Shown: one piece after another, positions 14,930 to 64,000 of the stretch
Position numbering within the stretch: the stretch's first letter is position 1
Layout: every line of letters starts with the position of its first letter
NCBI GenBank assembly: GCA_964304625.1
Contig: OZ199840.1
Coordinates: 51,595 to 115,594, forward strand
Reading direction: 5' to 3'
Origin: Kudoa neothunni
Lineage: Eukaryota > Animalia > Cnidaria
Length of the DNA: 64,000 nt
Notes under the pieces: generated by a model
The model's database searches: none
Seen by the model: only the letters and a program-made list of their open reading frames with translations
What the model was told of the DNA's origin: nothing
Made by a program: the position numbers and the translations under genes

Positions 14930-17900
14930 TTAATTTTTCTTCTTGAAAACCATGAAACCAATAGCACCCATGATCATAGCACCAATAGCTGCCACTGCAA
15001 TTATTCTAAAATAATATTAGTTAAATTGTAGGAACATAATAAAGTAATACATGACCATGGTTTTAGAACTAAATAAAAAATTTAATTATTTTAAAAATAT
15101 TAATTAATAAACCTTGAACTGCTTTTGGCTCCTAAAAGTTACAATTTAAATTATTTTCGAAGTAATAATGCTTTACCTTGCTCAATCGTAGCCGTCCCAT
15201 AAACTGTTTTATCGGTGGAACTGTACACAGTCAAGTGATAATTGTTGCCATCTGCTAATCCACTGATAGTGAATGATTTGCATGAAGGGTACGTTCTACA
15301 TCCATTGTCATTTCGTCTCATGCATTTTTTAATAATTGCAATCGATTTGGTACTCGCATTACGTAATTCCCACTTACATTTGGATTTTTCATTAAGACTA
15401 GATGGTAGGGTGTTTTCTATAACAAATGATTCACCGTCCCTTGTTATGGTCACATATATTATTTTGTCGTTTTCTGTGGGATTCCCCTTTGGAGCGGCTA
15501 TTTATTTTAAATATTAATATGATGATAATATCGAAAATATTTTTACTAGCTACTAAAGTAATTTCATTTCGCTCTGATTTTCCCACTGCAGTAATAGACA
15601 CTTTATACTCTTCATTTGCATCATAGTCGTTGAATTTAATAGAACTGCACAATGGAAATGAGGAGCATGTGTTTGAATTGGCCGGGCTCGCAGTTGTATC
15701 GACTGTCGTAGTTGGAGTGACATCTGTATCAGTTTCAGTTTCAGTAGGGGTATTAGATTCAGCTCTTGCAATTTTTAATTCATTAATTTCTGATTTTAGA
15801 CTTTGAATTTGACTAGTACCAGTTTGTGGTTGGTCGGTATTAGAATTGGATTCGGCTGGTGAGCTTGGTGGAGTATTTTGAGTTTCTGGTGCAGCTGCCG
15901 GTGTCTGTGATGCTTCGCAGACGTAAACATCTTCAAACTCATCATCTTTTTTTATTTGGATTGTATAATGGCAAATGGCTTCTGGGACTTTTTTGGACAA
16001 TTGTGCATTTAATTCCAATCCTTGTTCAGTGTATTTTTGAGTTATTCTCAAGGTTGCCAGATCTAGATTGAGTTGAATAAGTTAATATTTTGATATATAT
16101 ACTCGTCGTAACATTTTCATATATGTGTTCCTTGTAATCCTTATCAGCAATGGCCTTAACGTCGTAAGAAGTGTTTGGTTCGAGATCAACAATAGTTATT
16201 GGTTCTCTACATCTTCCTCTACAGGGATTGGTTTCAGTACATTTAGCGGTGTAAAATGTATTTTTCCCAGTTGGACTTACGTAATACTCACAGTTTGGCT
16301 CTTCATTTTTATTTGTCTTTGCGTCGCCTCCAATAGCAGTTAGTGTAGTGGTTGATTCTGTTTTAGTAGGGGCGGTTACTTGAAAATTTTTATTATCCTC
16401 ATTATCTTGTAAATATTATTAGTTAAGTTAATATTAAATTTTTCGTTATTACTTGTTCTTATAAGTATTTGTTCTTTGAAGGAAGTTGGATCTGCTATGC
16501 CACTGGATTCAATTTCGATGATGTACGGTTTTCCCGGAGCTAGCCTTTGAATTACTAATTTTTCGCAATCAGTTTTGCAATCATTAGTACTACCACCACT
16601 CTTTTTAGTGGCCGCGTCACACGTAGTGGTTGATGCAGTGTGTTTAATTTTGTCAGCAGAGTAATGCTTGAGCGTACAACTAGTGAATTTAGGTTCTGAT
16701 GATGGATTTAAAAATCTCCCATCAAACGTTAAACCTTGTTTCGTATAAACAGATAATAATCCAACTCCAGTCTCAGATATTGCTAAAAAATTTATAAATT
16801 AACATCGAATTAAATAAATTACGAAATTTTTTTTGAGAAAATCCATCTAAATCACTAAGAGAAGTTTTTGAAAGATCGTGATTTCTGGTTTGAATTAGAA
16901 CATTATATATCTCTTTTTCTGCTGTTACAGTAAGCTCAACGTCTTTGCATGGTGCGTAACACTTTCCTGCAGTATTTCCACACTTTGATTCAAACGTATC
17001 AACCGATGCCGCACTTTTACCGCCTTTAATATTGAAAACGCAGATTTCAGACGACAATGTCAAATCTGTAAATTTAAGAACAACTTGATTAGGAGCTCCT
17101 GTCTTTTTAATCACATAATACTGAGGCTCGTAAATGGCCATGTTATCCTTCATATATGCATTTGGCATATTATAGAAGAAGCTTGGATAATTCAGACACC
17201 TTACTTCATAATGTGGGATCAATAAATCAAATTCAACATCATTCTCTGTGTTGTCCGCGTCACATGTTCCTCCAGCGGTACCCGCGTTGAATTGTGCGTC
17301 TTTATAGTGAATTGAGCAACCAACTGGAGGGCAAGTTTTAGTTAAGAGTTTTAGTTTTTTGCTCCCATCAACAGATATTGTTGCTTGGGGATTTATCAGC
17401 AATGCTAAATTTAATGATGATTTACCGATTAAAAATTATTTCAATTACGTATGGCCAAACCAAATACTTTCCCACCTTTGGGATAAGTCTCAGCTTTGGC
17501 AGCATTCGTATCAGTACTATCGAATACATATATGTATTTTGTTCGTGGGGTGAGTTTATTATATGTTTCTTTACTAGCTTGACTATTGCAATCTATCACA
17601 CATTTGGTGTTACTATTAGTACTATCGTACCCGGGACAGTTTTCGATTTCTACTAAGCCAGCTGCTGATGTTGAACCGAAACTGTTTGCGGATGCATTGG
17701 ATATCAATATACGACACTTTTTTCCAACGCCATAACTTGATCCGTCAAGTATATGTTTTACTTTATTTGATTTAGTAGCATCCTCGTATTCGATTTGGTA
17801 TTTGAGTGTTGCTGTGGAAGTAGACGCAGCTGGAGTTCCCGATACTGTTGCATTTTTAATCATACAAAAGAATGCGATTTGAATGACTAATAAAAATTCA

Positions 17901-17959
17901 TGATTGATAATAAGAAAATAAATACATAAGAGGCAATGCAAAAATTTATCCATAGTCAT
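14930..17959 (-). CDS. Cys-rich FN3-like repeat type I membrane protein, array copy 1 (A-type 3' flank), apparently intact, 878 aa
   Basis: Ten exons: 17959-17926, 17886-17449, 17404-16823, 16782-16453, 16405-16103, 16062-15547, 15497-15177, 15131-15113, 15068-15051, 15005-14930. They join in frame (2637 nt) with GT-AG introns of about 39-49 nt. Hydrophobic N-terminus MTMDKFLHCLLFIQIAFFCMIKNA; FN3-like motifs LTPRTKY, LAPGKPY, LEPNTSY, GLADGNNY; TM MVIIIAVAAIGAMIMGAIGFMVF; tail KKKN. Confidence 0.88.
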
Positions 17960-18016
17960 ACTAAAAGGTAAAATAAAACAACAAATAGTACTGAATAAAT
18001 GAATACTATAATTAGC

Positions 18017-18320
18017 CGATACATGTATCGAATAAAAAACCTATTGAAACGACGATATACTTAAAGTCTTAATTCTTATTTACTATTAAATTAATAATTA
18101 TGAATTTAATATAGTTATTAAAATGCTGAAAATTGCAAATTGAAACAATTATTTTATTATATAGCTCAAACAAATTCTATAATACTTATTATCTCTTGTT
18201 CAATCCGCCATAATAAAGGCAAGGAAAAAAATTAATGGGTGGAACCAACTCTTACTGGATTAAATAATGAGTTAAATAATGTTAAACTTCATAAACGATA
18301 TTTACATTGACGTCATGTAA
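18017..18320 (-). promoter_or_regulatory. Conserved upstream region of the array genes, with a 14-bp palindrome CGATACATGTATCG and a CRE-type TGACGTCA
   Basis: Palindrome at 18017-18030 and TGACGTCA at 18308-18315. Both are kept at equivalent positions upstream of copies 1-5. Regulatory function is inferred. Confidence 0.45.
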
Positions 18321-18413
18321 GGTCATCCCAGGTATAAATAATATGAATAATTGGTAAAAATATTTATTCTTCTTCATTACGAATAAATAATCATCTAGAT
18401 AAATATAAATGTT

Positions 18414-19255
18414 GGCAGTGTCTATTGGCCCGAATAAATTGTTTTATTTAATTATCGAGCTTTTTATTATAGTAAATCTATTTTGTCTGACATAAAACAA
18501 CTTGAAATTGTTTACGTAATTTTATTTTCGAAGCATATCGGACAAAAATATTTTGTATAATGTAATAAGGTTTCGATTAAATGGTCCGAAAAAACTCATT
18601 TTATTGAGTTTATGAGTTATTTATTCAAATGAACATTCTTAGTTGTAATTTAATATGTAAGTATCTAAGTAATTAAAATTTTAAATTGTAACGCGCGTTA
18701 ATTTTATTGTATTTATCCCTTAATGGTGCAATACAAAATTATTCTAAAAAAATGTAAGATTTTTCATAAGAACACAATAAAGATAAAGTATGCAGTTGTT
18801 ATTTTTCAAGATATTTGGTTATAATAAAAGAAAAAGTTTTTGAAGGATTTGTTCAATTTATGTTCACACAAATCGTACAGAAAAATGAATCGACGATGGA
18901 TAATTATATAGAAGCAACTACTGAGAAATGCAATTGTCCCTTTCGTCTTTGCATGGAACTGCCATGTCGTCACATTTTCTAGGTGCGGAAAAAACAAAAC
19001 CTTCCTCTTTTTGATAAATGTTTGTGCTTGAAGAGATGGACAAGGGAGTATTTTGTTGAAAATTCTGAACTGGCCGATGTTTATGAAACAAATAATAGTT
19101 CATCAGAGAATGGTTTGATTGCTATAAATTCATTACCAAAAACTACTGTATATTCAGAGAATAGACAATTTAATGAAGCTACTAAATTGATGGAAGATGT
19201 AGCCGCAAGAATTTCAGAAAAAAACTGGATCTGATTATGAATATTGGATCAATAA
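18414..19255 (+). mobile_element. Mutator-like (MULE) element, left part with SWIM zinc-finger remnant, right-truncated
   Basis: Left TIR GGCAGTGTCTATTGGCCCGAA is the same as in the 54462 element. Remnant translation CNCPFRLCMELPCRHIF...KRWTREYF matches the SWIM CxC..CxH pattern of MULE transposases. Confidence 0.75.
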
Positions 19256-20092
19256 ACTGGATGATCAGAATAATTTTAATCCAGTTAAAGTTTTAAAACA
19301 TAATTGTTTTTTGCAAAAATATTAATCAGGAAAATGAAAACACATTCCACATGTCAAAAATTTCATTCAATAATCCCTATACTCGGAATCATATCGCCCA
19401 TTGTATTTCCAATCTAAAGAAGTATTAAGTGTAGACAACAATCAAAAAACTATCCTTATTTAAAGCTAAAATATTTTATAGTATTTTTTATTAGATTACT
19501 GCGACTTCAACATTATTGCGAGACAATTATTACAATGTAATTTGTATCCGAGCGATACTACAGAACGTTAGCTTGAAATAATGACAAAATATTGTTTTTT
19601 AGTATTGAAAATCAAAATCAAAATCCTCTTGAATATGTAATAAGTCATAAATATATATTAAACATGCATTTATCAATTAAAAACTGTTTCATCAATGATC
19701 ATTGTAACCTTATGTACCGTAAACAATCGCATATTATAGGTCGCATCCAAATTTTTGGCGTGTAAATTGGGGGTTTTCAATAGACCTACAGATCGGTCGT
19801 TCTGGAATTTTAGATGTTGAACGCCATCCATAAAAATAAATATTCTGTTGTATTTAGCTTCATTTAAAAAATCTTCTTGTAAATATTGGAATTCTTTTAA
19901 GATAACTACAAATTAAAGACTATAAACATAATTAAAATAAAAGATTTTATTCCTTTATAATATGATCAGTTGTTATTAAATGTCAGCAGAACTAGACCCT
20001 GAGAATTCATCATTATTATTATTATCACTTTCAGGATTCAGCAACAGTTGGTCGTTTGATATTACATTGTCATTAGTGACCATATCACAGTA

Positions 20093-20635: not shown

Positions 20636-20639
20636 TAGT

Positions 20640-21810: not shown

Positions 21811-22081
21811 TTTACCCATGACAAGGATTTACAAGTATCAAAGACGAGTGCTCAAATTATCGTAAAGTTCTCTTTGATCCAAATGTAAAGAGTTTTGTGA
21901 TAGTACTGATAAAGAATATTAAATATGATCATAATTTTGTTACGAAACTGATACATTACGTATGTTCTACAAAATGTTGCAATCAGACCTACACAGAACA
22001 TGAAAACGTAACCAGACAACGTGTAAAGAAAGAATCAAATATGTTACTCTATACATAATATAGATGCCTTAACTCCGGTTG

Positions 22082-24328
22082 TAAGGTTTAAGATCGGTTC
22101 GGTTTTTGTAAAAACCGAAATTTGAAATTCTTGTTAAGTATTTATCATATTCTAAACAAAGAAAACTTTTTAATGTATTGAATGAGTATATAATTTTCGT
22201 GGAATTGCACGTGTTTTAACGGTGATAAAATTGGTAAAAAATGGTGAGCGCTATTTGGAATTTTTTTGTTAAACTAGCCGATGAGAAGGCAACATGCAAA
22301 AAGTGCAATGCTGTACTTGTTTGCAAAAAAGGCTCAACGAGCACACTTCGTTCGCATGCCAAGACGCATGTGATTGATTCAAAATCAAAGTTATTCAGCA
22401 TTATTAATATTTTTAAATAAAAATTATAATCGTTCAAACGCAACCTATAATTAACAATTTTGTCAACAAAGATCTCTGGGAGTCAAATCTTGACTCAGTT
22501 ATCGCGAGACTGATTGCTGTCGACAATATTCCAATTTGGAAAATTGCCAGCAGTGTAACTTTAAGAAAATTGCTCAAAAAGGCACATGAAAAAGAAGTTC
22601 CAGTGTCCTATGACGCAATTTTTAATTCAATGATCATTGTGGAAAACTCAATGACAATGAAAATTAAAAAAATCATTGCTGGGTCAAACTCAAGGCCTGT
22701 ACTCTGTTGTGACGAGTGGACATCAAGGTCAAATAAACGTTTCCTTAATATCCAAGCCTATTTCGAGGGGAAAAAAATCTCTCTTGGTGTAGCAAGAGTG
22801 ACAGAAAGATACACAGGCGTAGAATTGGCTTCATTAGTAAATAAACAACTCTGCAAATTTGGAGTTAATTTGTTATGTGCACTGATGGAGCTTCGAACAT
22901 GGCAAAATGTACGTATGAGTTGGGGTTTCGGCGGATAAAATGCATGCTTCACGGCCTAAATTTGGGTAACCGTGTTGTCAAGTGACAATCCTAGAATAAC
23001 TTAACTTATAGCTGTTAAAGACATAATGTACAAAGAAACCTATAGTTTTCAGATAGAAAATACGGGAATGATAACGGAAGAGCTGGAATCTGATGAATTA
23101 GAATTTGATGAGCAGGAGTTTGTTCTTATGTCCAACTTTTTTGATGCTGTTTCTGGGGTCAGGTCAATTATCAATTTTTTTTCAAGATCTGGATTGGCTT
23201 CCGACACATTAAGGAAGTCGTGTGAGGAAAAAGGAATACAATATTTATCTCTAAACATTGATTGTGTCATAAATTGGTCCAGCTTATATCAAATGTTGAT
23301 AAAGTTTGTTCAAATGTACCAGGCAATAGAGCATACTTATTCTATTCTGGAAAAGGAATTATCAGTAAATAAGGACGAAATAATTTTCATCAATGTAATT
23401 ACTTAAATAATATTTTTATGAATGGTTTACAATAAAGGAACTAACATCATCCCCTGAAATTGTACATCGAGTTGTTCTTAAATTGTCTGAGTCGGTTATT
23501 AATTTGACGCCATGTGATTTTATATTGACAGGCGCAATAAATGAACTCACACATATTGAGGTATCAATTGCATCGAAATTAAAAGAAAGCGTCATCAAGC
23601 GCTGCAAAGAATGACGGACAATATTGTCGGACATTTTTTTGAATCCAAGTTTTGATTCAAAAATCTGTGACAAAAGCTTTTTCTACAAAAGAACGTCACG
23701 TTTTGAGATAGTGGAAGCGATAAACTTTGTTAAAACAGTTGATCAAATTGAAATTGTAGCCTCTGAGTCTAATTTGGACTTAGAAGACTTGATAATTTAC
23801 GTTTCCGAGCCCACGCGCATAAAACTTACCGACTCAAATGAAATCCTCAATTTTACATGTCATGGCGTGATGACAGATCGCTTAGAAAGAGTTCGAAAAG
23901 CCCTTTCTAACATGACCCAAAAGCATTGATTCCGAAATATGTTTTTCCTTGTGTAATCACATCATAACCCCACTTAGAATAAGATTGAGCGATTCAAAAC
24001 TCGACACTATCGTGTTTATTTATGAAGATCGAAATAATTAATTTTTGTTTGATTCCAATGATATTTGTTGTGATGCATTATGTAGAATTCTAACATAAAT
24101 AAACTATAACCACTTTTAAAAGGAAGGATCTATCATATTTAAAGAATTAAATTTTTTAAAAAGAGAATACAAAATTAATTAAGCTGTAAGATAATTTTAA
24201 ACCTTTTTTTAAAAGTATGTTTAAGAATGAATAGTTTATATTTATATTTTTTATAACTCATTAAATATTTCTTCTAAATAATTTAAAAAAATAACAAAAA
24301 ACCGAAAACCGAACCGAATTAAACCTTA
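22082..24328 (+). mobile_element. hAT DNA transposon with disrupted transposase
   Basis: TIRs TAAGGTTTAAGATCGGTTCGGTTTT and AAAACCGAACCGAATTAAACCTTA. BED finger (IWNFF...CKKC...GSTSTLRSHAKTH), CDEWTSRSNKRFL, CMLHGLNL, NWSSLYQML and C-terminal dimerisation motif SE..FSLCNHIITPLRIRLSD. Empty sites in the paralogous flanks at about 43940 and 63090. Confidence 0.92.
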
Positions 24329-24770: not shown

Positions 24771-27700
24771 TTAATGTTTCTTCTTGAAAACCACGAAACC
24801 AATAGCACCCATAATCAAAGCTCCAATAGCCGCTACAACGATTACTCTAAAATGATGTCAGTTAAATTGTAGGAAAATAATAAAGTAATACATGACCATG
24901 GTTTTAGAACTAAATAAAAAATTTATTTATTTATTTATTTTAAAAATATTAATTAATAAACCTTGAACTACTTTTGGCTCCTAAAAGTTACAATTTAAAT
25001 TATTTTCGAAGTAATAATGCTTTACCTTGCTCAATCGTAGCCGTCCCATAAACTGTTTTATCGGTGGAACTATACACAGTCAAATGATAATTGTTTCCAT
25101 CTGCTAATCCACTGATAGTGAATGATTTGCATGGGGGGAACCTTTTACATCCTTTGTCTCTTGGACTCATGCATTTTTTAATAATTGCTATCGATTTGGT
25201 ACTCGCGTTACGTAATTCCCATTTACATTTGGATTTATCATTAAGACTCGACGGAAGCGTGTTTTCTATAACAAATGATTCACCATCCCTTGTTATTGTT
25301 ACATATATTATTTTGTCGTTTTCTGTGGGATTCCCCTTTGGAGCAGCTATTTATTTTAAATATAATAATAATATTGAAAATATTTTTACTAGCTACTAAA
25401 GTAATTTCATTTCGCTCTGATTTTCCCACTGCAGTAATAGACACTTTATACTCTTCATTTGCATCATAGTCGTTGAATTTAATAGAACTGCACAATGGAA
25501 ATGAGGAGCATGTGTTTGTATTGGTCGGGCTCACAGTTGTATCGACTGTCGTAGTTGGAGTGACATCTGTATCAGTTTCAGTTTCAGTAGGGGTATTAGA
25601 TTCAGCTCTTGCAATTTTTAATTCATTAATTTCTGATTTTAGACTTTGAATTTGACTAGTACCAGTTTGTTCTTGGTCGGTATTAGAACTGGATTCGGCT
25701 GGTGAGCTTGGTGGAGTATTTTGAGTTTCTGGTGCAGCTGCCGGTGTCTGTGATGCTTCGCAGACGTAAACATCTTCAAACCTTTCATCTATTTTTATTT
25801 GGATTGTATAATGGCAAATGGCTTCTGGGACTTTTTTGGACAATTGTGCATTTAATTCCAATCCTTGCTCAGTGTATTTTTGAGTTATTCTCAAGGTCGC
25901 CAGATCTAGATTGAGTTGAATAAGTTAATATTTTGATATACATATATACTAGTTGTAACATTTTCATATATGTGTTCCTTGTAATCCTTATCAGCAATGA
26001 CCTTAACGTCGTAAGAAGTATTTGGTTCAAGATCAACAATAGTTATTGATTCTCTACATCTTCCTCTACAGGGGTTAGTTTCAGTACATTTAGCGGTGTA
26101 AAATATATTTTTTCCAGTTGGACTTATGTAATACTCACAGTTTGGCTCATTTTTCGGATCGCTTTCGTTGTTACCTCCAATGGCTGTTAGTATAGTTGTT
26201 GATTCTGTTTTAGTAGGGGCGGTTGCTTGAAAATTTTTATTCACCTCATTATCTTGTAAATATTATTAGTTAAGTTAATATTAAATTTTTTGTTATTACT
26301 TGTTCTTATAAGTATTTTTTCTTTGAAGGAAGCTGGATCTGGTATGTCAGATTCAATTTCAATTATATATGGTTTCCCTGGTGATAGTTGTTCAATTACT
26401 AATTTTTCGCAACCAGTTTTGCATTCGGCGCTGCTGCCACTATCAGCCTTTTTAGTGGCCGCGTCACACGTAGTGGTTGATGCAGTGTGTTTAATTTTGT
26501 CAGCAGGATAATGTTTGAGTGTACAAGTAGAAAATTTGGTCCCAGAACCTTGTTTTAACAGTGTTCCGTCAAAAGATACACCTTGCTTGGTATAATCTGA
26601 CAATAATACGTTTTCAGTCTCGGATATTGCTAAATAATTTATAAATTAACACCGAATTAAATAAATTACGAAATTTATTTTGAGAAAACCCATCTAATTC
26701 ACTAATAGAAATTTTTGAAAGATCGTGATTTCTGGTTTGAATTAGAACATTATATATTTCTTTTTCTGCAGTTAGAGTAAGCTCAACGTCTTTGCATGGT
26801 GCGTAACACTTTCCTGCAGTATTTCCACACTTTGATTCAAAGGCATCACCCGATGCTGCACTTTTAGCGTCCTTAATGCCAAAAACACAGATCTCAGACG
26901 ATAACGTTAAATCTGTAAATTTAAGAACAACTTGATTAGGAGCTCCTGTCTTTTTAGTCACATAATACTGAGGCTCGTAAATGGCCATATTATTCTTCAT
27001 ATATGCATTTGGCATATTATAGAAGAAGCTTGGATAATTCAGACACCTTATTTCATAATGAGGAATCAATAAGTCAAATTCAACATCATTAATTGTGTTG
27101 TCCGCGTCACATGTTGCTCCTGCGTTACCCCCCTTGAATTGTGCATCTTTATAGTGAATAGGGCACGCAACCGGAGGGCAAGTTTTAGTTAAGAGTTTTA
27201 GTTTTTTGCTGTCATCAACAGATATTTTTGCTTGGGGATTTACCAACAACGCTAAATTTAATAATGATTTATCGAATAAAAATTATTTAAACTACGTATG
27301 GCCAAACCAAATACTTTTCCACCATTTGGATATGTCTCTGCTTTAGCAGTGGCCTCATCACCATTATCAAATACATACATGTATTTTGTTCTTGGGGAAA
27401 TCTTATCGTATGGAACTTTGCTATCTTGTTTATTGCAAGCAATTACGCAATAATTGTTATTATTAGTGGTAATATATCCAGGGCAGCTCGTTATTTCTTC
27501 ATATACAGCTGCCCTTGTTTGGCTACCATCGTTTGCGGATGCGTTGGATATCAGTATACGACACTTTTTTCCATCGCCATAACTTGATCCGTCAAGTATA
27601 TGTTTCACTTTATTAGATTTGCTCTCATCATCGTACTCAATTTGGTATTTGAGTGTAGCTGTGGGAGTAGATGTAGCTGTAGATTTAGGCACTGTTGCAT

Positions 27701-27806
27701 TTTTAATCATACAAAAGAATGCGATTTGCATGACTAATAAAAATTCATGATTGATAATAAAAAAATAGATACATAAGAGGCAAAGCAAAAATTTATCTTT
27801 AACCAT
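24771..27806 (-). CDS. Cys-rich FN3-like repeat membrane protein, array copy 2 (B-type 3' flank), apparently intact
   Basis: Same exon-intron layout as copy 1. Exon ORFs are open (27258-27806, 26614-27249, 26241-26603, 25906-26244, 25280-25894). Starts MVKDKFLLCLLFMQIAFFCMIKNA and ends FKKKH-TAA. Confidence 0.86.
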
Positions 27807-31700: not shown

Positions 31701-34700
31701 TTATTTTTTCTTCCTGAAAACCACGAAACCAATAGCACCCATGATCATAGCTCCAATAGCGGCTACTGCAATGATTCTAAAACAATATCAGTTAAATTAT
31801 AAAAACACAATAAATTAATACATGACCATGGTTTTAGAACTAAATGTAAAATTTATTTATGTTAAAAATATTAATTAATAAACCTTGAACTGCTTTTTGC
31901 TCCTAAAAGTTACAATTTAAATTATTTTCGAAGTAACAATGTTTTACCTTGCTCAATAGTAGCGGTCCCATAAACTGTTTTATCGGTGGAACTGTACACA
32001 GTCAAATGATAATTGTTGCCATCTGCTAATCCACTGATAGTGAATGATTTGCATGGGGGGAATCTTTTACATCCTTTATCCCTTGGACTCATGCATTTTT
32101 TAATAATTGCTATCGATTTGGTACTCGCGTTACGTAATTCCCATTTACATTTGGATTTTTCATTAAGACTAGATGGTAGGGTGTTTTCTATAACAAATGA
32201 ATCACCATCCCTTGTTATTGTTACATATATTATTTTGTCGTTTTCTGTGGGATTCCCCTTTGGAGCAGCTATTTATTTTAAATATAATAATAATATTGAA
32301 AATATTTTTACTAGCTACTAAAGTAATTTCATTTCGCTCTGATTTTCCCACTGCAGTAATAGACACTTTATACTCTTCATTTGCATCATAGTCGTTGAAT
32401 TTAATAGAACTGCACAATGGAAACGAAGAGCATGTGTTTGAATTGACCGGGCTCGCAGTTGTATCGACTGTCGTAGTTGGAGTGACATCTGTATCAGTTT
32501 CAATTTGGGTATTAGATTCAGATCTTGCAATTTTTAATCCATTAACTTCTGATTTTAGACTTTGAATTTGACTATTATCAGTTTGTCCTTGGTCGGTATT
32601 AGGACTGGATTCGGCTGGTGAGCTTGGTGGAGTATTTTGAGTTTCTGGTGCAGCTGCCGGTGCCTGTGATGCTTCGCAGACGTAAACATCTTCAAACCCG
32701 TCATCTTTTTTTATTTGGATAGTATAATGGCAAATGGCTTCTGGGACTTTTTTGGACAATTGTGCATTCAATTCCAATCCTTGCTCAGTGTATTTTTGAG
32801 TTATTCTCAAGGTCGCCAGATCTAGATTGAGTTGAATAAGTTAATATTTTGATATACATATATACTAGTTGTAACATTTTCATATATGTGTTCCTTGTAA
32901 TCCTTATCAGCAATGACCTTAACGTCGTAAGAAGTATTTGGTTCAAGATCAACAATAGTTATTGATTCTCTACATCTTCCTCTACAGGGGTTAGTTTCAG
33001 TACATTTAGCGGTGTAAAATGTATTTTTCCCAGTTGGACTTATGTAATACTCACAGTTTGGCTCATCTTTCTTATCAGTTCTTGCCGTATCTCCAATAGC
33101 TGTTAGTGTAGTTGTTGATTCTGTCTTAGTGGGCGCAGTTGCTTGGAAATTTTTATCATCCGTTTTATCTTTTAATGATTATTAGTTTTGTTGACTTTTA
33201 ATTTCGAATTATTACTTGTCCATATCAATATTTTTTCGTTTAACGAAGTTGGATTGCTGCCACCAGTTAATGCGATTTCAAGAATATAAGGTTTTCCTGC
33301 GGTTAACCCTTCAATTATTAATTTTTCGCAATCAGTTTTGCAATCATTAGTACTACCACCACTATTTTTAGTGGTCGCGTCACACATAGTGGTTGATGCA
33401 GTGTGTTTAATTTTGTCAGCAGAGTAGTGCTTGAGCGTACAAGTAGAAAATGTGGTCCCAGGCCCTTGTTTTAAAAATGTTCCGTCAAAAGATACACCTT
33501 GCTTGGTATACGCAGATAATAAACCAACTCCAGTCTCAGTTATTGCTACAATTTTTGTAAAAGTTAATACTGACTAAAATAAAATACGAAATTTTTGTTG
33601 GAAAAATCCATTTGAATCGACTTGGTGGGTTTTGAAAGATCGTGATGTCTGGTTTGGATTAAGACGCTGTAAACATCTTTTGTTGCAGTCAGAGTAAGCT
33701 CAACATCTTTGCATGGTGCGTAACATTTTCCATCCTGATTTCCACAGTTTGATTCGAATTGTTTGCTATTTCCTGCAGATGTACCATCTTTAATACCAAA
33801 AACACAGATCTCAGATGATAAACGTTAAATCTGTGAATTTAAGACCAACTTGATTAGGAGCTTCTGTCTTTTTAGTCACATAATACTGAGGCTCGTAAAT
33901 GGCCATATTATTCTTCATATATGCATTTGGCATATTATAGAGAGAAGCTTGGATAATTCAGGACACCTATTTCATAATGAGGAATCAATAAGTCAAATTC
34001 AACATCATTAATTGTGTTGTCCGCGTCACATGTTCCTACAGCGGTACCCGCGTTGAATTGTGCGTCTTTATAGTGAATAGGGCACGCAACTGGAGGACAA
34101 GTTTTAGTTAAGAGTTTTAGTTTTTTGCTCTCATCAACAGATATTTTTGTTTGGGATTTACCAGTAACGCTAAGTTGAATAAAATAAGCTATCAATTCAA
34201 ATTTATCTAGATTACGTATGGTCAAACCAAATACTTTTCCACCTTTGGGATAAGTCGCAGCTTTGGCAGCACTCGTATCAGTACTATCGAATACATATAT
34301 GGTATTTTGTTCTTGGAGAAAGTTTATCGTATGGAACTTTGCTATCTTGTTTATTGCAATCTATCACGTATTTGGTGTTACTCTCAGTATTATCGTGCCC
34401 TGGACAGTTTTCGATTTCTTCTAAGCCAGCTGCTGACGTCGAACCGAAACTGTTTGCTGCTGCATTGGATATCAATATACGACACTTTTTTCTCATCGCC
34501 ATAACTTGATCCGTCAAGTATATGTTTTACTTTATTTGAATTATTAGCATCACCGTATTCAATTTGGTATTTGAGTGTTGCTGTGGGAGTAGATGTAGCT
34601 GTAGATTTAGGCACTGTTGCATTTTTAATCATACAAAAGAATGCGATTTGCATGACTAATAAAAATTCATGATTGATAATAAAAAAATAGATACATAAGA

Positions 34701-34728
34701 GGCAAAGCAAAAATTTATCTTTAACCAT
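31701..34728 (-). pseudogene. Array copy 3 (A-type flank); frameshifted as assembled (pseudogene or consensus errors)
   Basis: Full-length paralogue with 1-nt insertions relative to copies 1/2 near 34492, 34301, 33941 and 33821. Ends FRKKK-TAA. Confidence 0.7.
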
Positions 34729-44416: not shown

Positions 44417-47400
44417 TTATTTTTTCTTCTTGAAAACCACGAAACCAATAGCACCCATGATCATAGCTCCAATAGCGGCTACTGCAATTATTCTAAAACA
44501 ATACCAGTTAAATTGTAAGAACACAATAAATTAATACATGACCATGGTTTTAGAACTAAATACAAAATTTATTTATTTTAAAAATATTAATTAATAAACC
44601 TTGAACTGCTTTTTTGCTCCTAAAAGTTACAATTTAAATTATTTTCGAAGTAATAATGCTTTACTTGCTCAATCGTAGCCGTCCCATAAACTGTTTTATC
44701 GGTGGAACTGTACACAGTCAAATGATAATTGTTGCCATCTGCTAATCCACTGATAGTGAATGATTTGCATGGGGGGAATCTTTTACATCCTTTATCCCTT
44801 GGACTCATGCATTTTTTAATAATTGCTATCGATTTGGTACTCGCGTTACGTAATTCCCATTTACATTTGGATTTTTCATTAAGACTAGATGGTAGGGTGT
44901 TTTCTATAACAAATGAATCACCATCCCTTGTTATTGTTACATATATTATTTTGTCGTTTTCTGTGGGATTCCCCTTTGGAGCAGCTATTTATTTTAAATA
45001 TTACATATAATAATAATAATATCGAAAATATTTTTACTAGCTACTAAAGTAATTTCATTTCTCTCTGATTTTCCCACTGCAGTAATAGACACTTTATACT
45101 CTTCATTTGCATCATAGTCGTTGAATTTAATAGAGCTGCACAATGGAAACGAAGAGCATGTGTTTGAATTGACCGGGCTCGCAGTTGTATCGACTGTCGT
45201 AGTTGGAGTGACATCTGTATCAGTTTCAATTTGGGTATTAGATTCAGATCTTGCAATTTTTAATCCATTAACTTCTGATTTTAGACTTTGAATTTTACTA
45301 GTACCAGTTTGTGGTTGGTCGGTATTAGAATTGGATTCGGCTGGTGAGCTTGGTGGAGTATTTTGAGTTTCTGGTGCAGCTGCCGGTGCCTGTGATGCTT
45401 CGCAGACGTAAACATCTTCAAACCCGTCATCTTTTTTTATTTGGATTGTATAATGACAAATGGCTTCTGGGACTTTTTTGGACAATTGTGCATTTAATTC
45501 CAATCCTTGCTCAGTGTATTTTTGAGTTATTCTCAAGGTCGCCAGATCTAGATTGAGTTGAATAAGTTAATATTTTGATATACATATATACTAGTTGTAA
45601 CATTTTCATATATGTGTTCCTTGTAATCCTTATCAGCAATGACCTTAACGTCGTAAGAAGTATTTGGTTCAAGATCAACAATAGTTATTGATTCTCTACA
45701 TCTTCCTCTACAGGGGTTAGTTTCAGTACATTTAGCGGTGGTGAAAATGTATTTTTCCCAGTTGGACTTATATAATACTCACAGTTTGGTTCTTCATTTT
45801 TATTTGTCCTCTGGTTCGCCTCCAATAGCAGTTAGTGTAGTTCTAGATTCTGTCATAGCAGGGGCAGTTTCTTGGAAATTTTTATCTTCCGTTTTATCTA
45901 TTAATGATTATTAGTTTTAATGCTTTTTAATTTCAAATTATTACTTGTCCATATCAATATTTGTTCGTTTAAGGAAGTTGGATTGCTGTTACCAGTTAAT
46001 GCGACTTCAAGAATATAAGGTTTTCCTGCAGTTAATCCTTCAATTACTAATTTTTCGCAGCTAGCTTTACAATCATTATTATTAGTACTTCTGTAATTTT
46101 CGCCACATTGAGTGATAGATGGATCTTTTTTAATATTGTCAGCTGGGTAATGTTTTAAAGTGCAACCAGTAAACTGTGTGCCTGATCCTGGCTTAAAAAC
46201 TGCTGCGTCAAAAGATACACCTTTATTGGTATAATCTGACAACAAACCGTTTCCAGTCTCCGATATTGCTAAAAAATTTATAAAAGTTAATATTGACTAA
46301 AATAAATTACGAAATTTATTTTGAGAAAACCCATCTAATTCACTAATAGAAATTTTGAAAGATCGTGATTTCTGGTTTGAATTAGAACATTATATATTTC
46401 TTTTTCTGCAGTTAGAGTAAGCTCAACGTCTTTGCATGGTGCGTAACACTTTCCTGCAGTATTTCCACAGTTTGATTCGAATTGTTGGCTATTTTCTGCA
46501 GATGTACCATCTTTAATACCAAAAACACAGATCTCAGATGATAGTGTTAAATCTGTGAATTTAAGAACAACTTGATTAGGAGCTCCTGTCTTTTTAGTCA
46601 CATAATACTGAGGTTCATAAATAGCCATATTTTTCTTCATATATTCGTTTGGCATATGATAAAAAAAACTTGGATAATTCTGACACCTCATCTCATAATG
46701 AGGAACTAGTGTATCAAACTCCACAGTGTTTTGTTGATTATCCCCGTCGCAACTTGATCCTACGGCTCCTCCCGCGAACGTGGCGTCTTTGTAATGGATG
46801 GGGCACGCAACTGGAGGACAAGTTTTTGATAAGAGTTTAAGTTTTTTGTTCTCATCAACAGATATTATTGCTTGGGGATTTACCAGTAACGCTAAATTGA
46901 ATAATATTATTTATTGATTCATATTTTTTTAGATTACGTATGGCCAATCCAAACACTTTTCCACCTTTTGGATATGTGTCTTCTTTAACTGTAGCCTCAA
47001 TAGTATTATCATATACATACATGTATTTTGTTCTTGGAGAGAACTTATTGTATGAAACTTTGCTAGCTTGACTATTGCAATCTATCACGCATTTGGTGTT
47101 TTCACCATTATTATTCCCAGGGCACTCAGTTATTTCTCCATACGCGGCTGCTTCTGTCGATCCACCCACGTTTGCTGCTGTATTGGATATCAATATACGA
47201 CACTTTTTTCCTTCGCCATAACTTGACCCAACAAGTATATGTTTTACTTTATTTGAATTACTAGCATCACCGTATTCAATTTGGTATTTGAGTGTAGCTG
47301 TAGATTCAGGCACTGTCGCATTTTTAATCATACAAAAGAATGCGACTTGCATGACTAATAAAAATTCATGATTGATAATAAAAAATTAGATACATAAGAG

Positions 47401-47427
47401 GCAAAGCAAAAATTTATCTTTAACCAT
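44417..47427 (-). pseudogene. Array copy 4 (B-type flank); frameshifted as assembled
   Basis: Full-length paralogue with small indels near 46870, 46730-46770, 46352, 45740 and 44664. Ends FKKKK-TAA. Confidence 0.7.
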
Positions 47428-50980: not shown

Positions 50981-53900
50981 TTATTTTTTCTTCTTGAAAA
51001 CCACGAAACCAATAGCACCCATAATCAAAGCTCCAATAGCCGCTACAACGATTACTCTAAAATGATGTCAGTTAAATTGTAAGAACATAATAAAGTAATA
51101 CATGACCATGGTTTTAGAACTAAATGCAAAATTTATTTATTTATTTTAAAAATATTAATTAATAAACCTTGAACTGCTTTTGGCTCCTAAAAGTTACAAT
51201 TTAAATTATTTTCGAAGTAATAATGCTTTACCTTGCTCAATCGTAGCCGTCCCATAAACTGTTTTATCGGTGGCACTGTATACAATTAAGTGATAATTGT
51301 TGCCATCTGCTAATCCACTGATAGTGAATGATTTACATGAAGGGTACGTTCTACATCCATTGTCATTTCGTCTCATGCATTTTTTAATAATTGCTATCGA
51401 TTTGGTACTCGCGTTACGTAATTCCCATTTACATTTGGATTTTTCATTAAGACTAGATGGTAGGGTGTTTTCTATAACAAATGATTCACCATCCCTTGTT
51501 ATGGTCACATATATTATTTTGTCGTTTTCTGTTGGATTCCCCTTTGGAGCAGCTATTTATTTTAAATATTATAATAATATTGAAAATATTTTTACTAGCT
51601 ACTAAAGTAATTTCATTTCGCTCTGATTTTTCCCACTGCAGTAATAGACACTTTATACTCTTCATTTGCATCATAGTCGTTGAATTTAATAGAACTGCAC
51701 AATGGAAATGAGGAGCATGTGTTTGAATTGACCGGGCTCGCAGTTGTATCAACTGTTGTAGCTGGGGCAACATTTGTGTCAGTTTCAGTTTGAGTAATAG
51801 ATTCAGCTCTTGCAATTTTTAATTCATTAATTTCTGATTTTAGACTTTGAATTTTACTAGTACCAGTTTGTCCTTGGTCGGGATTAGGACTGGATTAGGC
51901 TGGTGAGCTTGTTGGAGTATTTTGAGTTTCTGGCGCAGCTGCCGGTGTCTGTGATGCTTCGCAGACGTAAACATCTTCAAACCTTTCATCTTTTTTTATT
52001 TGGATTGTATAATGGCAAATGGCTTCTGGGACTTTTTTGGACAATTGTGCATTCAATTCCAATCCTTGCTCAGTGTATTTTTGAGTTATTCTCAAGGTTG
52101 CCAGATCTAGATTGAGTTAATAAGTTAACTTTTTGAGAAATATACTCGTCGTAACATTTTCATATATGTGTTCTTTGTACTCCCTTATCAGCAATGACCT
52201 TAACGTCGTAAGAAGAGTTTGGTTCAAGGTCAATTATTGTTATTGATTCTCTACATCTTCCTCTACAGGGATTGGTTTCAGTACATTTAGCGGTGTAAAA
52301 TGTATTTTTCCCCGGCTGGACTTATATAATACTCACAGTTTGGTTCATCTTTCTTATCAGTTTCTGCCGTACCTCCAATAGCTGTTAGTATAGTTGTTGA
52401 TTCTGTTTTGGTAGGGGTAGTTGCTTGGAAATTTTTATTCGCCTCATTATCTTGTAAATATTATTAGTTAAGTTAATATTAAATTATTAGTTATTACTTG
52501 TTCTTATGAGTATTTTTTCTTTGAAGGAAGCTGGATCTGTTATACCAGATTCAATTTCGATGATGTATGGTTTCCCCTGGTGATAATTGTTCAATTACTA
52601 ATTTTTCGCAATCAGTTTTACAATCACCACTACTATCAGTCTTTTTAGTGGCCGTGTTACATTTAGTGATTGATGCAGTGTGTTTTATTTTGTCAGCTGC
52701 GTAATGTTTCAGAGTACAACTAGTGAACTGTGTGCCTGATCCTGGCTTAAAAACTGCTGCGTCAAAAGATACACCATTATTGGTATAATCTGACAATAAA
52801 CCTTTTCCAGTCTCCAATATCGCTAATTATTAAATATATAATCTTATTAAATTTAATAAGATACCAAATTTTTTTTGAGAAAATCCATCTAAATCACCAA
52901 TAGAAGTCTTTGATAGGTCGTGATGCCTGGTTTGTACTAAGACGTTGTAAATATCTTTTGTTGCAGTCAGAGTAAGCTCAACATCTTTGCATGGTGCGTA
53001 ACATTTTCCATCCTGATTTCCACAGTTTGATTCGAATTGTTGGTTATTTCCTGCAGATGTACCATCTTTAATACCAAAAACACAGATCTCAGATGATAGT
53101 GTTAAATCTGTGAATTTAAGAACAACGTGATTAGCAGCTCCTGTCTTTTTAGTAATATAATACTGAGGCTCGTAAATGGCCATATTATTCTTCATATATG
53201 CATTTGGCATATTATAGAAGAAGCTTGGATAATTCAGACACCTTATTTCATAATGAGGAACTAATTTATCAAACTCCACAGTGTTTTGTTGATTATCCCC
53301 GTCGCAACTTGATCCTACGGTTCCTCCCGCGAACGTGGCGTCTTTGTAATGGATGGGGCACGCAACTGGAGGACAAGTTTTTGATAAGAGTTTAAGTTTT
53401 TTGTTCTCATCAACAGATATTATTGCTTGGGGATTTACCAGTAACGCTAAATTGAATAATATTATTTATTGATTCATATTTTTTTAGATTACGTATGGCC
53501 AATCCAAACACTTTTCCACCTTTTGGATATGTGTCTTCTTTAACTGTAGCCTCAATAGTATTATCATATACATACATGTATTTTGTTCTTGGGGAAACCT
53601 TATCGTATGGAACTTTGCTATCTTGTTTATTGCAAGCAATTACGCAATAATTGTTGTTATTATTAGTGGTAATATATCCAGGGCAGCTCGTTATTTCTTC
53701 ATATACAGCTGCCCCTGTTTGGCTACCATCGTTTGCTGCTGCATTTGGATATCAATATACGACACTTTTTTCCATCGCCATAACTTGAGCCGTCAAGTAT
53801 ATGTTTTACTTTATTTGATTTTACTAACAACATCGTATTCGATTTGGTATTTGAGTATAGCTGTGGGAGTAGAAGTAGCTGTAGATTCAGGCACTGTTGC

Positions 53901-54009
53901 ATTTTTAATCATACAAAAGAATGCGATTTGCATGACTAATAAAGATTCATGATTGATAATAAAAAAAATAGATACATAAGAGGCAAAGCAAAAATTTATC
54001 TTTAACCAT
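50981..54009 (-). pseudogene. Array copy 5 (A-type flank); frameshifted as assembled
   Basis: Full-length paralogue with several 1-nt indels (near 53522, 52575, 52182, 51630) and an in-frame stop in exon 6 at about 51895. Ends FKKKK-TAA. Confidence 0.7.
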
Positions 54010-62585: not shown

Positions 62586-63527
62586 GCCCCTTGTTTATTA
62601 ATTCCAAAGCTCATTCAAACAATTCTTTTTTAATTTCTTTATATTAAGATACTAAAAATCTAGTTGATTTTTTCGATTTTGACATTTCTTTAAGATTAGC
62701 TTTTCGCTTTCTCCATCGTCTCATTAACTTTCGTGGAACTCCAAACTCTTTTCTCACAAATCTACATTCATGTTCATTTGCATGGTCAATCACTTTAAAC
62801 TCATAGCTGTCTAATTGATTCTTTGTTTATCCATAACAAGGATTTACGAGTATCAAAAACGAATGCTCAAATTATCGTATAGTTCCCTATGATCTGAATG
62901 TAAAGAGGTTTGTGCTAGTAATGATAAAGAATATTAAATATAATCTTAATTTTGTTACGAAACTGATACATTACATATGTTCTATAAAATTTTACATTCA
63001 GACCTACACGGAATTTGAAAAAGTAATCATACTACGTGTAAAAAAAGAATCAAATATATTGCTCTATACATAATATAGATGTCTAATTCCAGCTGTAAAC
63101 AATGTGAAATATAAAAGGATTTTAAATGAATTTATACTGCATTTTTATTATAATAAATGTATATATTACTAGTGGCATCATTTTTAACATAACGCTCTGG
63201 TTCGGTAGGATCACTTCATATTCGATTTGTGCAGAGGACACCTTACCAATATATAACGAACCCAATCTGATACTTGAATCTAAGTATACGCACAATCATA
63301 GTAACATTTTTGGAAAAGTTAATGTCAATCTTCAAAGTATGGCCGATAAAAAGTTTTCGACCAAAACGAGATTATATACAATAAATATTAAATCATATTT
63401 TTTGATTTGAACACTTAATAGTTTGAATTATTGATAAATAAAAGCAGGATTAAAAATATCGGAGCATGAATTAAATAATCGAAATTTCTCTAACTAGATA
63501 GTAGGGAAAAATTCGTAAATATAGGGT

Positions 63528-64000
63528 TTAATTTTTCTTCTTGAAAACCACGAAACCAATAGCACCCATGATCATAGCACCAATAGCCGCCACTGCAATT
63601 ATTCTAAAACAATATTAGTTAAATTGTAGGAACATAATAAAGTAATACATGACCATGGTTTTAGAACTAAATAAAAAATTTAATTATTTTAAAAATATTA
63701 ATTAATAAACCTTGAACTGCTTTTGGCTCCTAAAAGTTACAGTTTTAATTATTTTCGAAGTAATAATGTTTTACCTTGCTCAATAGTGGCTGTCCCATAA
63801 ATTGTTGGATTGATAGAACTGTACACAGTCAAATGATAATTGTTGCCATCTGCTAATCCACTGATAGTGAATGATTTGCATGGGGGGAACCTTTTACATC
63901 CTTTATCCCTTGGACTCATGCATTTTTTAATAATTGCAATCGATTTGGTACTCGCGTTACGTAATTCCCACTTACATTTGGATTTTTCATTAAGACTCGA
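63528..64000 (-). CDS. Array copy 6 (B-type flank); 3' part only (exon 7 to TM exon), truncated by the window edge
   Basis: Contains KCKWELRNASTKSIAIIKKCMSPRDKGCKRFPPCKSFTISGLADGNNY, both micro-exons and the TM exon ending FKKKN-TAA. Confidence 0.85.

What the first reader, a model, noticed from the sequence alone, without database searches (positions are those of the whole stretch)
14930..64000. Candidate variant surface-antigen locus: tandem paralogues that are segmental mosaics of each other
Seen: no single tree explains the copies. In exon 2, copy 3 starts identical to copy 2 (VPKSTATSTPTAT), switches to copy-1 type (NSFGSTSAAGL.EIENCPG), then copy-2 type (NKQDSKVPYDK), then copy-1 type (DSTDT.AAKA). 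Copy 5 is copy-2 type (NDGSQT.AAVYEEITSCPGYITT) and then copy-4 type (YDNTIEATVKEDTY). Exon 4 shuffles the blocks FDAAVFKPGSGTQF (copies 4,5), SGGSTNDCKTDC (1,3), EQLSPG (2,5) and EGLTAGKPYILE (3,4). Exon 7 has two variants, RRNDNGCRTYPS (1,5) and SPRDKGCKRFPP (2,3,4,6), while the TM exon groups copies 2 and 5. Established: segmental gene conversion diversifies trypanosome VSG, Borrelia vls and Anaplasma msp2 antigens. Inference: this is a conversion-driven immune-evasion, host-recognition or self/non-self repertoire in a compact-genome animal. I do not recognise the family.
Basis: partly seen in the sequence, partly recalled or inferred. Interest (0 to 1): 0.88.

Follow-up and report, generated by a model that had tools for sequence, protein, structure and literature searches.

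The report
Recombining surface-protein gene array in Kudoa
Six tandem genes of a fish-muscle parasite (a myxozoan, almost certainly Kudoa neothunni) encode a large, undescribed family of membrane proteins whose copies are real patchworks of one another, but whether the parasite uses this to evade immunity is untested.

Summary
The window carries six tandem minus-strand copies (the sixth cut by the window end) of a 9-exon gene. It encodes an ~863-aa type I membrane protein: signal peptide, seven 4-Cys FN3-like modules, a Thr/Pro-rich linker, a TM helix and a 4-residue basic tail.

The mosaicism is strongly significant:
- PHI z = -42, and at least 57 recombination events.
- 22 of 28 pairs share significant tracts of 60-320 nt. 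These cross introns and also link to an array 2.7 Mb away.
- Every segment's data reject every other segment's tree.

The genome matches the published Kudoa neothunni assembly, a cnidarian parasite of yellowfin tuna. The family has at least 150, possibly ~480, members. It has no Pfam match and no named relative, and the genome paper does not mention it.

- Copies 3-5 carry 1-nt frameshifts as assembled. These are probably errors kept by a ~7x HiFi assembly, not true pseudogenes.
- pN/pS is 0.2-0.5 almost everywhere, so there is no sign of diversifying selection.

Best reading: a lineage-specific family reshuffled by ectopic gene conversion and probably at the parasite surface. Antigenic variation remains a hypothesis, with no expression or localisation data. 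First-stage notes flag the same family in six other windows of this genome, none checked.

The parts
14930..17959 (-). Copy 1, intact 9-exon gene (863 aa). Exons: 17959-17926, 17886-17449, 17404-16823, 16782-16453, 16378-16103, 16062-15547, 15497-15177, 15131-15113, 15005-14930.
   Evidence: Model and translation. All internal exons are phase 1-1. There are 30 Cys, 4 per module, 5 N-glycosylation sequons and a TM at residues 840-858.
24771..27806 (-). Copy 2, intact 9-exon gene (863 aa).
   Evidence: same exon structure, only in-frame indels, no stops.
31701..34728 (-). Copy 3, with six 1-nt frameshifts in exons 2-3 as assembled (34493, 34302, 34155, 33942, 33822, 33633). No nonsense codon in register.
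   Evidence: Contigs built from the source reads show the frame-restoring state at all six sites, three of them on contigs that otherwise match copy 3 exactly in segments unique to copy 3.
44417..47427 (-). Copy 4. As assembled: a 1-nt deletion in exon 3, +1/+2 insertions in exon 5, and a compensated -1/+1 across the exon 7/8 junction.
50981..54009 (-). Copy 5, with six +1 insertions as assembled and one in-register TAA in exon 6 (codon 624).
63528..64000 (-). Copy 6, 3' part only (exons 7-9). The gene continues beyond the window end.
   Evidence: The rest lies in G000:C3:114970-118670 (L026).
17960..18420 (-). Conserved upstream (putative promoter/5'UTR) region, repeated before every copy. 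It is also mosaic: copies 1 and 5 share one distal flank type, copies 2, 3 and 4 the other.
   Evidence: Repeat families D3, D6, D15, D18; alignment; nearest-neighbour scan.
14679..14929 (-). 3' flank. Two alternating types (copies 1, 3, 5 against 2, 4, 6) indicate an ancestral two-gene duplication unit of about 19.3-19.6 kb.
   Evidence: Last alignment block; spacings of families D17 and D19.
22241..23929 (+). hAT-like transposon remnant (BED zinc finger ORF plus following ORFs) inserted in the copy 1 - copy 2 spacer. Not part of the gene family.
   Evidence: Pfam zf-BED E = 8e-8; ORFs.

Best explanation
This is one tandem array of a very large gene family restricted to the Kudoa lineage, in the myxozoan parasite Kudoa neothunni.

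The protein. Each gene encodes an ~860-aa type I membrane glycoprotein:
- a signal peptide;
- seven modules with four conserved cysteines each, roughly one module per phase 1-1 exon (two in exon 3, and one split by the linker in exon 6), of which the one that could be modelled is FN3-like;
- a Thr/Pro-rich mucin-like linker;
- one TM helix and a 4-residue basic tail.

How it evolves. The array grew by duplication of a two-gene unit. The copies then kept exchanging 60-320 bp DNA tracts by ectopic gene conversion or unequal crossing-over, both inside the array and with a sister array 2.7 Mb away. This has two effects:
- It homogenises the membrane-proximal half (pS 0.08-0.16).
- It reshuffles a limited set of old, deeply diverged sequence types in the distal half (pS 0.3-0.4).
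Almost all variation is therefore shared in new combinations, and little is private to a copy. The genes are under purifying selection.

Function (inferred, not shown). The proteins coat or decorate the parasite surface and act in host or cell contact. Combinatorial reshuffling supplies repertoire diversity on an evolutionary time scale.
For: Gene model and intact ORFs.

Modular 4-Cys pattern, sequons, TM and tail.

FN3-like fold of exon 3:
- AlphaFold pLDDT 70.
- Foldseek probability 1.0 to IL-17RA, CD45 d1-d2 and cytokine receptors.
- VIA Z 6.2-7.0, rmsd about 3 A over about 80 residues, all top hits FN3 domains.

Family size: exon 3 gives 482 candidates, of which 150 were scored, all at E < 1e-48, and 144 of those 150 have no stop. 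Exon 7 gives 318 candidates.

Lineage restriction:
- 18 unnamed fragments among 1.84 billion representative proteins.
- Collinear homologues at 30-44% identity in other samples.
- No Pfam match and no Atlas match.

Recombination:
- Nearest-neighbour switching.
- PHI and Rm.
- Tracts that cross introns and link the two arrays.
- AU tests.
- Only 15-23 private coding substitutions per copy, against about 10-14% pairwise divergence.

Purifying selection and the distal-to-proximal gradient.

Organism:
- Three chromosomes of 17.15, 12.04 and 11.05 Mb plus an 18.2-kb mitochondrial contig.
- The mitochondrial contig reads TGA as Trp and has no tRNA genes.
- (TAAACC)n is found at only one chromosome end.
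- All of this matches PMC12239612.
Against: - No transcript, protein or localisation evidence exists. The signal peptide and TM are read from sequence only.
- The tail (KKKN, KKKH, KKKK) fits the KKXX di-lysine ER-retrieval consensus, so the protein might not reach the surface.
- The N-terminal 'tip' domain could not be modelled (pLDDT 34).
- FN3 assignment rests on a medium-confidence model. Pfam fn3 scores only E = 0.14 on exon 7.
- Three of five full copies are frame-disrupted in the assembly. If those frameshifts are real, the array is partly decaying.
- The assembly has only about 7x coverage from a single infected fish.
Confidence: 0.62

Rival explanations
1. A true antigenic-variation system. 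One or a few copies are expressed at a time. New chimeras arise somatically (mitotically) during infection by segmental conversion from the other copies, as with VSG, vlsE, msp2 or var, letting the parasite escape fish antibodies.
For: - Large archive enriched towards chromosome ends.
- Short-tract mosaicism.
- Predicted surface topology.
- Variability concentrated in the membrane-distal modules.
- Antigenic change has been proposed for other myxozoans (10.64898/2026.02.11.705288).
Against: - No expression data.
- No distinguishable expression site: all copies have the same upstream region, signal peptide and TM.
- pN/pS is below 1 in the variable loops.
- The 'silent pseudogene' copies are probably sequencing artefacts.
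- K. neothunni grows inside muscle fibres, a site with little antibody exposure (established biology, not tested here).
Confidence: 0.1
2. An ordinary adhesion, recognition or structural family, for example parasite cell-to-cell contacts in the cell-in-cell stages, or spore or plasmodium coat proteins. The mosaicism is then a neutral by-product of concerted evolution in tandem arrays, with no role for diversity as such.
For: - FN3-type ectodomains are typical animal adhesion modules.
- Purifying selection throughout.
- Strong homogenisation of the proximal half.
- Tandem-array architecture with unequal crossing-over signatures in the flanks.
Against: - At least 150 and possibly ~480 members in a genome annotated with about 5,300 genes (PMC12239612) is far more than structural needs suggest.
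- Old divergent types are retained in the distal modules instead of being homogenised away.
- The 4-residue tail gives no link to cytoskeleton or signalling.
Confidence: 0.2
3. An assembly artefact. The patchwork and the frameshifts arise from collapsed or chimeric assembly of near-identical repeats at low coverage.
For: - Only about 7x k-mer coverage, assembled with hifiasm-meta.
- Frameshifts look like read errors.
- A 98-100% identical two-gene duplicate elsewhere on C3 may be an unpurged haplotig.
Against: - Mosaic blocks are 60-320 bp, far shorter than HiFi reads. An assembler that stitches whole 10-20 kb reads cannot create dozens of sub-kb switches (inference).
- Copies differ by 10-14% and sit in distinct spacers.
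- The same discrete types recur in arrays megabases apart.
- Copies 1 and 2 are flawless ORFs.
Confidence: 0.03
4. An intracellular (ER or secretory-pathway) membrane protein family retained by a C-terminal di-lysine signal, and so never exposed to the host.
For: The tails KKKN, KKKH and KKKK match KKXX at the extreme C-terminus of a type I protein. The motif's role is established knowledge of COPI retrieval signals.
Against: - Copy 3 ends RKKK, so the motif is not strictly kept.
- Short basic tails are also the rule in surface-displayed diplomonad VSPs.
- Hundreds of diversified, glycosylated, mucin-linked ectodomains are hard to explain for an ER resident.
Confidence: 0.05

Closest known systems
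Plasmodium falciparum var / rif (and Babesia ves, Giardia vsp) multigene families
   Same: Hundreds of complete genes, each with its own promoter. They are clustered and enriched near chromosome ends, encode single-pass surface-type proteins, and are diversified by ectopic recombination that yields segmental mosaics of a limited set of homology blocks.
   Different: Unrelated protein folds (DBL/CIDR, 2TM, CXXC-rich) against FN3-like 4-Cys modules. The organism is an animal, not a protist. Exclusive expression, surface display and immune recognition are all unshown here. Cys content is 3.5% with no CXXC, so it is not a Giardia-type VSP.
Trypanosoma brucei VSG, Borrelia vlsE, Anaplasma msp2
   Same: Short-tract, segmental conversion between paralogous sequences produces chimeric coding regions.
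   Different: Those systems feed one expression site from silent, often truncated cassettes. Here every copy is full-length with signal peptide, TM and the same upstream region. No expression site is discernible, and the frame-disrupted copies are doubtful.
Hydractinia Alr allorecognition gene complex (cnidarian; Huene et al. 2022, cited in PMC11792419)
   Same: A cnidarian lineage. A tandem cluster of type I membrane proteins whose beta-sandwich domains escape sequence-based detection. Variants are shaped by recombination among neighbours.
   Different: Alr ectodomains are Ig-like (V-set/I-set-like) and the proteins have signalling tails. This family is FN3-like with a 4-residue tail. No sequence similarity was found and homology was not tested.
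Sphaerospora molnari 'VSP', 'RIFIN/STEVOR' and 'ETRAMP'-like families (bioRxiv 10.64898/2026.02.11.705288; PMC11792419)
   Same: Lineage-specific, duplicated membrane-protein families in a myxozoan, proposed to serve immune evasion. Short basic C-terminal motifs.
   Different: Those have 10-27 genes per family and are defined by CXXC richness or similarity to protist families. They are reported as specific to S. molnari. The Kudoa family is at least 150 genes, FN3-like, and not mentioned in either paper or in the K. neothunni genome paper.
Cysteine-bearing FN3 ectodomains of CD45, IL-17RA and class I cytokine receptors
   Same: Best structural matches for the exon-3 tandem domain. Disulfide-stapled FN3-like sandwiches in a type I membrane protein.
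   Different: Only a fold-level resemblance (6-18% identity, Z at most 7). No cytoplasmic domain, no WSXWS-type motif tested, and no implication of shared function.

Membership tests
Fibronectin type III (FN3) fold | Seven-stranded beta-sandwich of about 90-100 residues recognisable by structure comparison | tested here: met
   In the exon-3 model, residues 91-193 align to many FN3 domains (monobodies, fibronectin, LEP-R, gp130) at Z 6.2-7.0, rmsd about 3 A, 77-85 residues. Foldseek probability is 1.0 to tandem-FN3 receptors. The model is only medium confidence (pLDDT 70).
Fibronectin type III (FN3) fold | Match to the Pfam fn3 profile (PF00041) above its cut-off | tested here: not met
   Exon 7 scores E = 0.14, 12.8 bits, against a cut-off of 25. 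The other exons have no hit.
Antigenic-variation system (VSG / vlsE / msp2 / var type) | Archive of many variant copies | tested here: met
   At least 150 scored copies of the exon-3 domain and 482 candidates. Six copies lie in this window.
Antigenic-variation system (VSG / vlsE / msp2 / var type) | Segmental exchange between copies | tested here: met
   PHI, Rm, GENECONV-like and AU tests.
Antigenic-variation system (VSG / vlsE / msp2 / var type) | Mutually exclusive or switching expression, with new variants arising within an infection | not testable with these tools
   No RNA run holds the locus. The source paper reports very few parasite RNA reads.
Antigenic-variation system (VSG / vlsE / msp2 / var type) | Exposure on the parasite surface and recognition by host antibody | not testable with these tools
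   Only the predicted signal peptide, TM and sequons are available. The KKXX-like tail is a caveat.
Antigenic-variation system (VSG / vlsE / msp2 / var type) | Diversifying selection on exposed parts | tested here: not met
   Pooled pN/pS is 0.2-0.6 in all 30-codon windows of the folded domains. It reaches 1 or more only in the low-complexity linker. This is a window-level test, so single sites were not resolved.
Antigenic-variation system (VSG / vlsE / msp2 / var type) | Silent pseudogene donors | tested here: inconclusive
   Copies 3-5 are frameshifted in the assembly. Over 22 copies there are about 55 frameshifts against 1 nonsense codon. The indels are insertion-biased and homopolymer-rich. 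Read-derived contigs restore the frame at all six copy-3 sites.
Giardia-type variant-specific surface protein (VSP) | More than 10% cysteine with many CXXC/CXC motifs | tested here: not met
   3.5% Cys, 0 CXXC, 0 CXC in copy 1.
Giardia-type variant-specific surface protein (VSP) | Type I topology with a very short conserved basic C-terminal tail | tested here: met
   A TM helix followed by KKKN, KKKH, RKKK or KKKK.

The most novel reading that the evidence does not exclude
A metazoan (cnidarian) parasite runs a genuine antigenic- or phase-variation system. One or a few of several hundred FN3-like surface genes are expressed at a time. New chimeras, and perhaps in-frame/out-of-frame homopolymer variants (both states were seen in reads at some sites), arise mitotically during infection. 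This would parallel var/VSG biology, but in an animal and on an animal-type adhesion fold.
Probability: 0.08. Interest if true: 0.9.

Novelty: new member of a known kind. Interest (0 to 1): 0.58.

Why it matters
Myxozoans are economically important fish parasites, and K. neothunni causes post-mortem 'jelly meat' in tuna. Their genomes are full of uncharacterised orphan genes.

This family may be the largest in the Kudoa genome: at least 150 and possibly ~480 members, against about 5,300 annotated genes. It is invisible to Pfam and to homology-hint annotation. It was probably counted among the 45.6% 'repeats' and is not mentioned in the genome paper (the link to repeat masking is an inference).

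The family gives a concrete, testable candidate for the parasite-host interface, for diagnostics or vaccine antigens, and for asking whether an animal parasite has evolved a recombining contingency-gene repertoire like those of protists.

It is also a warning for low-coverage HiFi cobiont assemblies: apparent pseudogenes may be uncorrected read errors.

Tried and rejected
- Nematode origin. Rejected: the nematode-specific TTR-52 family was not found (though the control did not ring either), and the mitochondrial and telomere features fit Kudoa.
- Sphaerospora molnari, which has the same 40-Mb genome size. Rejected: it has a 14-kb mitogenome, 40 contigs and 7 chromosome pairs.
- Pfam on all large exons gave nothing above cut-off.
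- The ESM Atlas feature search gave only scores below 0.9.
- AlphaFold of the N-terminal exon-2 domain failed (pLDDT 34), so nothing can be said about the tip fold.
- The profile search of 1.84 billion representatives gave only 18 unnamed fragments.
- Looking for family relics in the spacers found none.
- Testing whether the window is a duplicate of the array at C3:2.8 Mb: it is not. The first 14 kb match only dispersed repeats.
- Testing for relaxed constraint in copies 3-5 through private substitutions: counts are too small to tell (N/S 1.5-4.0 against 2.0-2.2 in intact copies and 3.35 for random change).
- RNA evidence.
- The joined (spliced) protein was never sent to a search tool. Exons were searched one by one by reference, and spliced models were used only inside scripts.
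Full report
WHAT IS THERE

Direct-repeat analysis finds six copies of a ~3.5-kb unit, starting near 14.9, 24.7, 31.7, 44.4, 51.0 and 63.5 kb. The coding strand is the minus strand.

From the ORFs and the sequence I built a 9-exon model with GT..AG introns of 39-107 nt. Copy 2 is equally intact.

The protein has:
- a hydrophobic N-terminus;
- 28 ectodomain cysteines arranged as seven groups of four, roughly one group per exon (two in exon 3, and one split by the linker in exon 6);
- five N-x-S/T sequons;
- a Thr/Pro/Ser-rich stretch in exon 6;
- one strongly hydrophobic helix;
- the tail KKKN.

All internal exons are phase 1-1, the classic arrangement of animal extracellular-domain exons.

THE MOSAIC IS REAL

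A nearest-neighbour scan shows each copy changing its closest relative every 100-300 nt, with several blocks at 100% identity:
- copies 4 and 5 over about 270 nt spanning intron 2;
- copies 2, 3 and 4 over about 240 nt in exon 5;
- copies 3 and 4 over about 320 nt in exon 7.

Statistics:
- PHI on copies 1-5 is 0.316, against 0.570 +/- 0.006 in permutations (0 of 1000 as low). Rm is at least 57. With three further close copies from elsewhere on C3, Rm is at least 111.
- A GENECONV-like permutation gives globally significant tracts for 22 of 28 pairs, 60-320 nt long. Some cross exon-intron borders. Several link this array to copies at C3:2.82-2.84 Mb.
- ML trees of six gene segments differ, and each segment's data reject all five other trees (AU p < 0.05 in 30 of 30).
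- Each copy has only 15-23 private coding substitutions, although pairs differ by 10-14%. So almost all variation is old and shared in different combinations.
- The 3' flanks alternate between two types (copies 1, 3, 5 against 2, 4, 6) and repeat spacings show a ~19.5-kb two-gene period. The array therefore grew by duplicating a gene pair and was later scrambled.

WHOSE GENOME

G000 has three contigs of 17.15, 12.04 and 11.05 Mb plus an 18.2-kb contig. The small contig is mitochondrial-like: GC 44%, TGA must be read as Trp, and ARAGORN finds no tRNA gene. That is the signature of Kudoa mitochondria.

The published Kudoa neothunni assembly (Weber, Paulini and Blaxter 2025, PMC12239612) was extracted from yellowfin-tuna HiFi data. 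It has 40.2 Mb, three chromosomes, a circular mitogenome, 30.4% GC, a 49-nt median intron and a (TAAACC)n telomere at one chromosome end only. In G000 that repeat occurs only at the right end of C2.

The coded sequencing runs fit a host-species label: huge WGS runs, RAD-seq and metatranscriptomes. I take the identification as near certain, although no tool named the organism.

THE FAMILY

Search results:
- Exon 3 (193 aa) gives 482 first-look candidates. The 150 that were scored are all at E < 1e-48, and 144 of them have no stop.
- Exon 7 gives 318 candidates.
- Hits are enriched toward chromosome ends, for example the first 0.7 Mb of C3 and the last 1 Mb of C1, but they also occur internally (my count).

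The window lies 52-116 kb from the left end of the C3 scaffold, which has no telomere repeat.

A profile of 17 paralogous exon-3 domains finds only 18 proteins among 1.84 billion representatives. All are short, unnamed ORFs from metagenome or Logan contigs. Two of these contigs are collinear homologues at 30-40% identity with some introns missing, so related species carry the family.

Pfam finds nothing and the ESM Atlas nothing. The K. neothunni paper does not mention gene families, paralogues or surface proteins. It annotated with protein hints only and reports 45.6% repeats. My inference is that the family was missed or masked.

FOLD

The exon-3 domain models as an all-beta tandem (pLDDT 70).
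- Foldseek's best matches are IL-17RA, CD45 d1-d2 and class I cytokine receptors (E about 1e-4, probability 1.0).
- VIA-align places residues 91-193 on dozens of FN3 domains at Z 6.2-7.0.

This is a fold-level statement only. The exon-2 'tip' could not be modelled.

THE FRAMESHIFTS

As assembled, copies 3, 4 and 5 are broken by 1-nt indels. I do not think they are established pseudogenes, for four reasons:
1. Over 22 copies there are about 55 frameshifting indels but a single in-register nonsense codon. About 5% of random base changes would be nonsense.
2. The indels are mostly +1 and mostly in short homopolymers. The same A-run in exon 5 is hit in three unrelated copies.
3. A copy with 15 frameshifts (C3:34-38 kb) is 98.4% identical to an intact copy at 2.79 Mb. 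They differ by 24 indels against 58 substitutions.
4. Contigs built independently from the four source runs show the frame-restoring state at all six copy-3 sites. At three sites they do so on contigs that otherwise match copy 3 perfectly over 167-224 nt, in segments with no other copy above 89% in the genome.

The assembly's state is also seen at some sites, so heterozygous or mixed-population alleles cannot be excluded.

hifiasm-meta stitches contigs from individual corrected reads, and coverage was about 7x. Uncorrected read errors are therefore expected. The same logic argues that sub-kb mosaics cannot be assembly products (inference).

SELECTION

Pooled Nei-Gojobori estimates give pN/pS of 0.2-0.5 for every exon and below 1 for every 30-codon window of the folded domains. 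The ratio exceeds 1 only in the low-complexity linker, on few changes.

Both pN and pS are several-fold higher in exons 2-4 (pS 0.30-0.40) than in exons 6-7 (0.08-0.16). The 'variable tip, constant base' pattern therefore reflects different depths of coalescence, that is different homogenisation, rather than amino-acid-level positive selection.

INTERPRETATION

- Shown: an array of complete genes of a huge, lineage-specific, FN3-like type I membrane protein family, reshuffled by ectopic gene conversion and unequal crossing-over and kept under purifying selection.
- Inferred: display at the parasite surface and a role in host or cell contact.
- Not shown: any form of antigenic variation.

It is families of complete genes that recombine ectopically, such as var/rif. 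Against surface display stands the KKXX-like tail, although diplomonad VSPs, which are surface proteins, also end in short basic motifs.

PRIOR NOTES

First-stage notes of this scan describe the same kind of family in six other windows of this genome, and this stretch twice. None had been followed up.

Noticed in passing
G000:C3:34269-50755 versus G000:C3:2789353-2805845 (L024/L025 versus L031/L032): A two-gene segment just left of the window is duplicated 2.75 Mb away, in the same order and spacing. One gene pair is identical apart from 1 substitution and 3 indels (two of 1 nt, one of 15 nt). The other is 98.4% identical, with 24 mostly homopolymer indels and 15 frameshifts in the distal copy. 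This is either a very recent segmental duplication or an unpurged, lower-quality haplotig placed at the scaffold end.
   Followed up: partly
window 22241-23929 (+): BED-zinc-finger ORF (Pfam zf-BED, E = 8e-8) followed by ORFs without Pfam hits, lying in the copy 1 - copy 2 spacer. Probably a hAT-type transposon remnant, which would account for this spacer being longer than the homologous copy 2-3 and copy 4-5 spacers.
   Followed up: partly
window 8901-9257 (-): An exon matching the gamma-tubulin complex component C-terminal domain (PF04130, E = 6e-12). It is an ordinary housekeeping gene directly beside the array.
   Followed up: no
window 240-1420, 2740-3218, 9650-10500: Three dispersed repeat families with dozens of copies at 72-87% identity on all three chromosomes. 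Probably transposable elements.
   Followed up: no
G000:C4:1-18219 (L047, L048): An 18.2-kb mitochondrial-like contig with GC 44%, far above the 30% of the nuclear genome. Open frames appear only when TGA is read as Trp. ARAGORN finds no tRNA genes under either the standard or the metazoan mitochondrial setting.
   Followed up: partly
G000:C2:12039536-12040069: The (TAAACC)n telomere-type repeat is present at one chromosome end only. The other five scaffold ends, including the C3 end next to this window, lack it, so 'subtelomeric' here is by scaffold position only.
   Followed up: partly
window 52313 (copy 5 exon 5); L024 and L029 at the homologous place: Three unrelated copies (copy 5, and the copies at C3:37 kb and C3:144 kb) are frameshifted at the same short G/A run in exon 5. 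This is either a sequencing-error hot spot or a slippage-prone site.
   Followed up: partly
window 18282-18377 (-), repeated upstream of every copy: A small conserved ORF (31 aa, hydrophobic start) lies about 330 nt upstream of the start codon, inside the conserved upstream block. It could be an alternative first exon or a uORF.
   Followed up: no
L045 (Logan contig) and L041 (Logan contig, GC 17%): Collinear homologues from other public samples have exon 2+3, or exon 3+4, fused without an intron. Intron positions in the family therefore vary between species. L041 is extremely AT-rich.
   Followed up: partly
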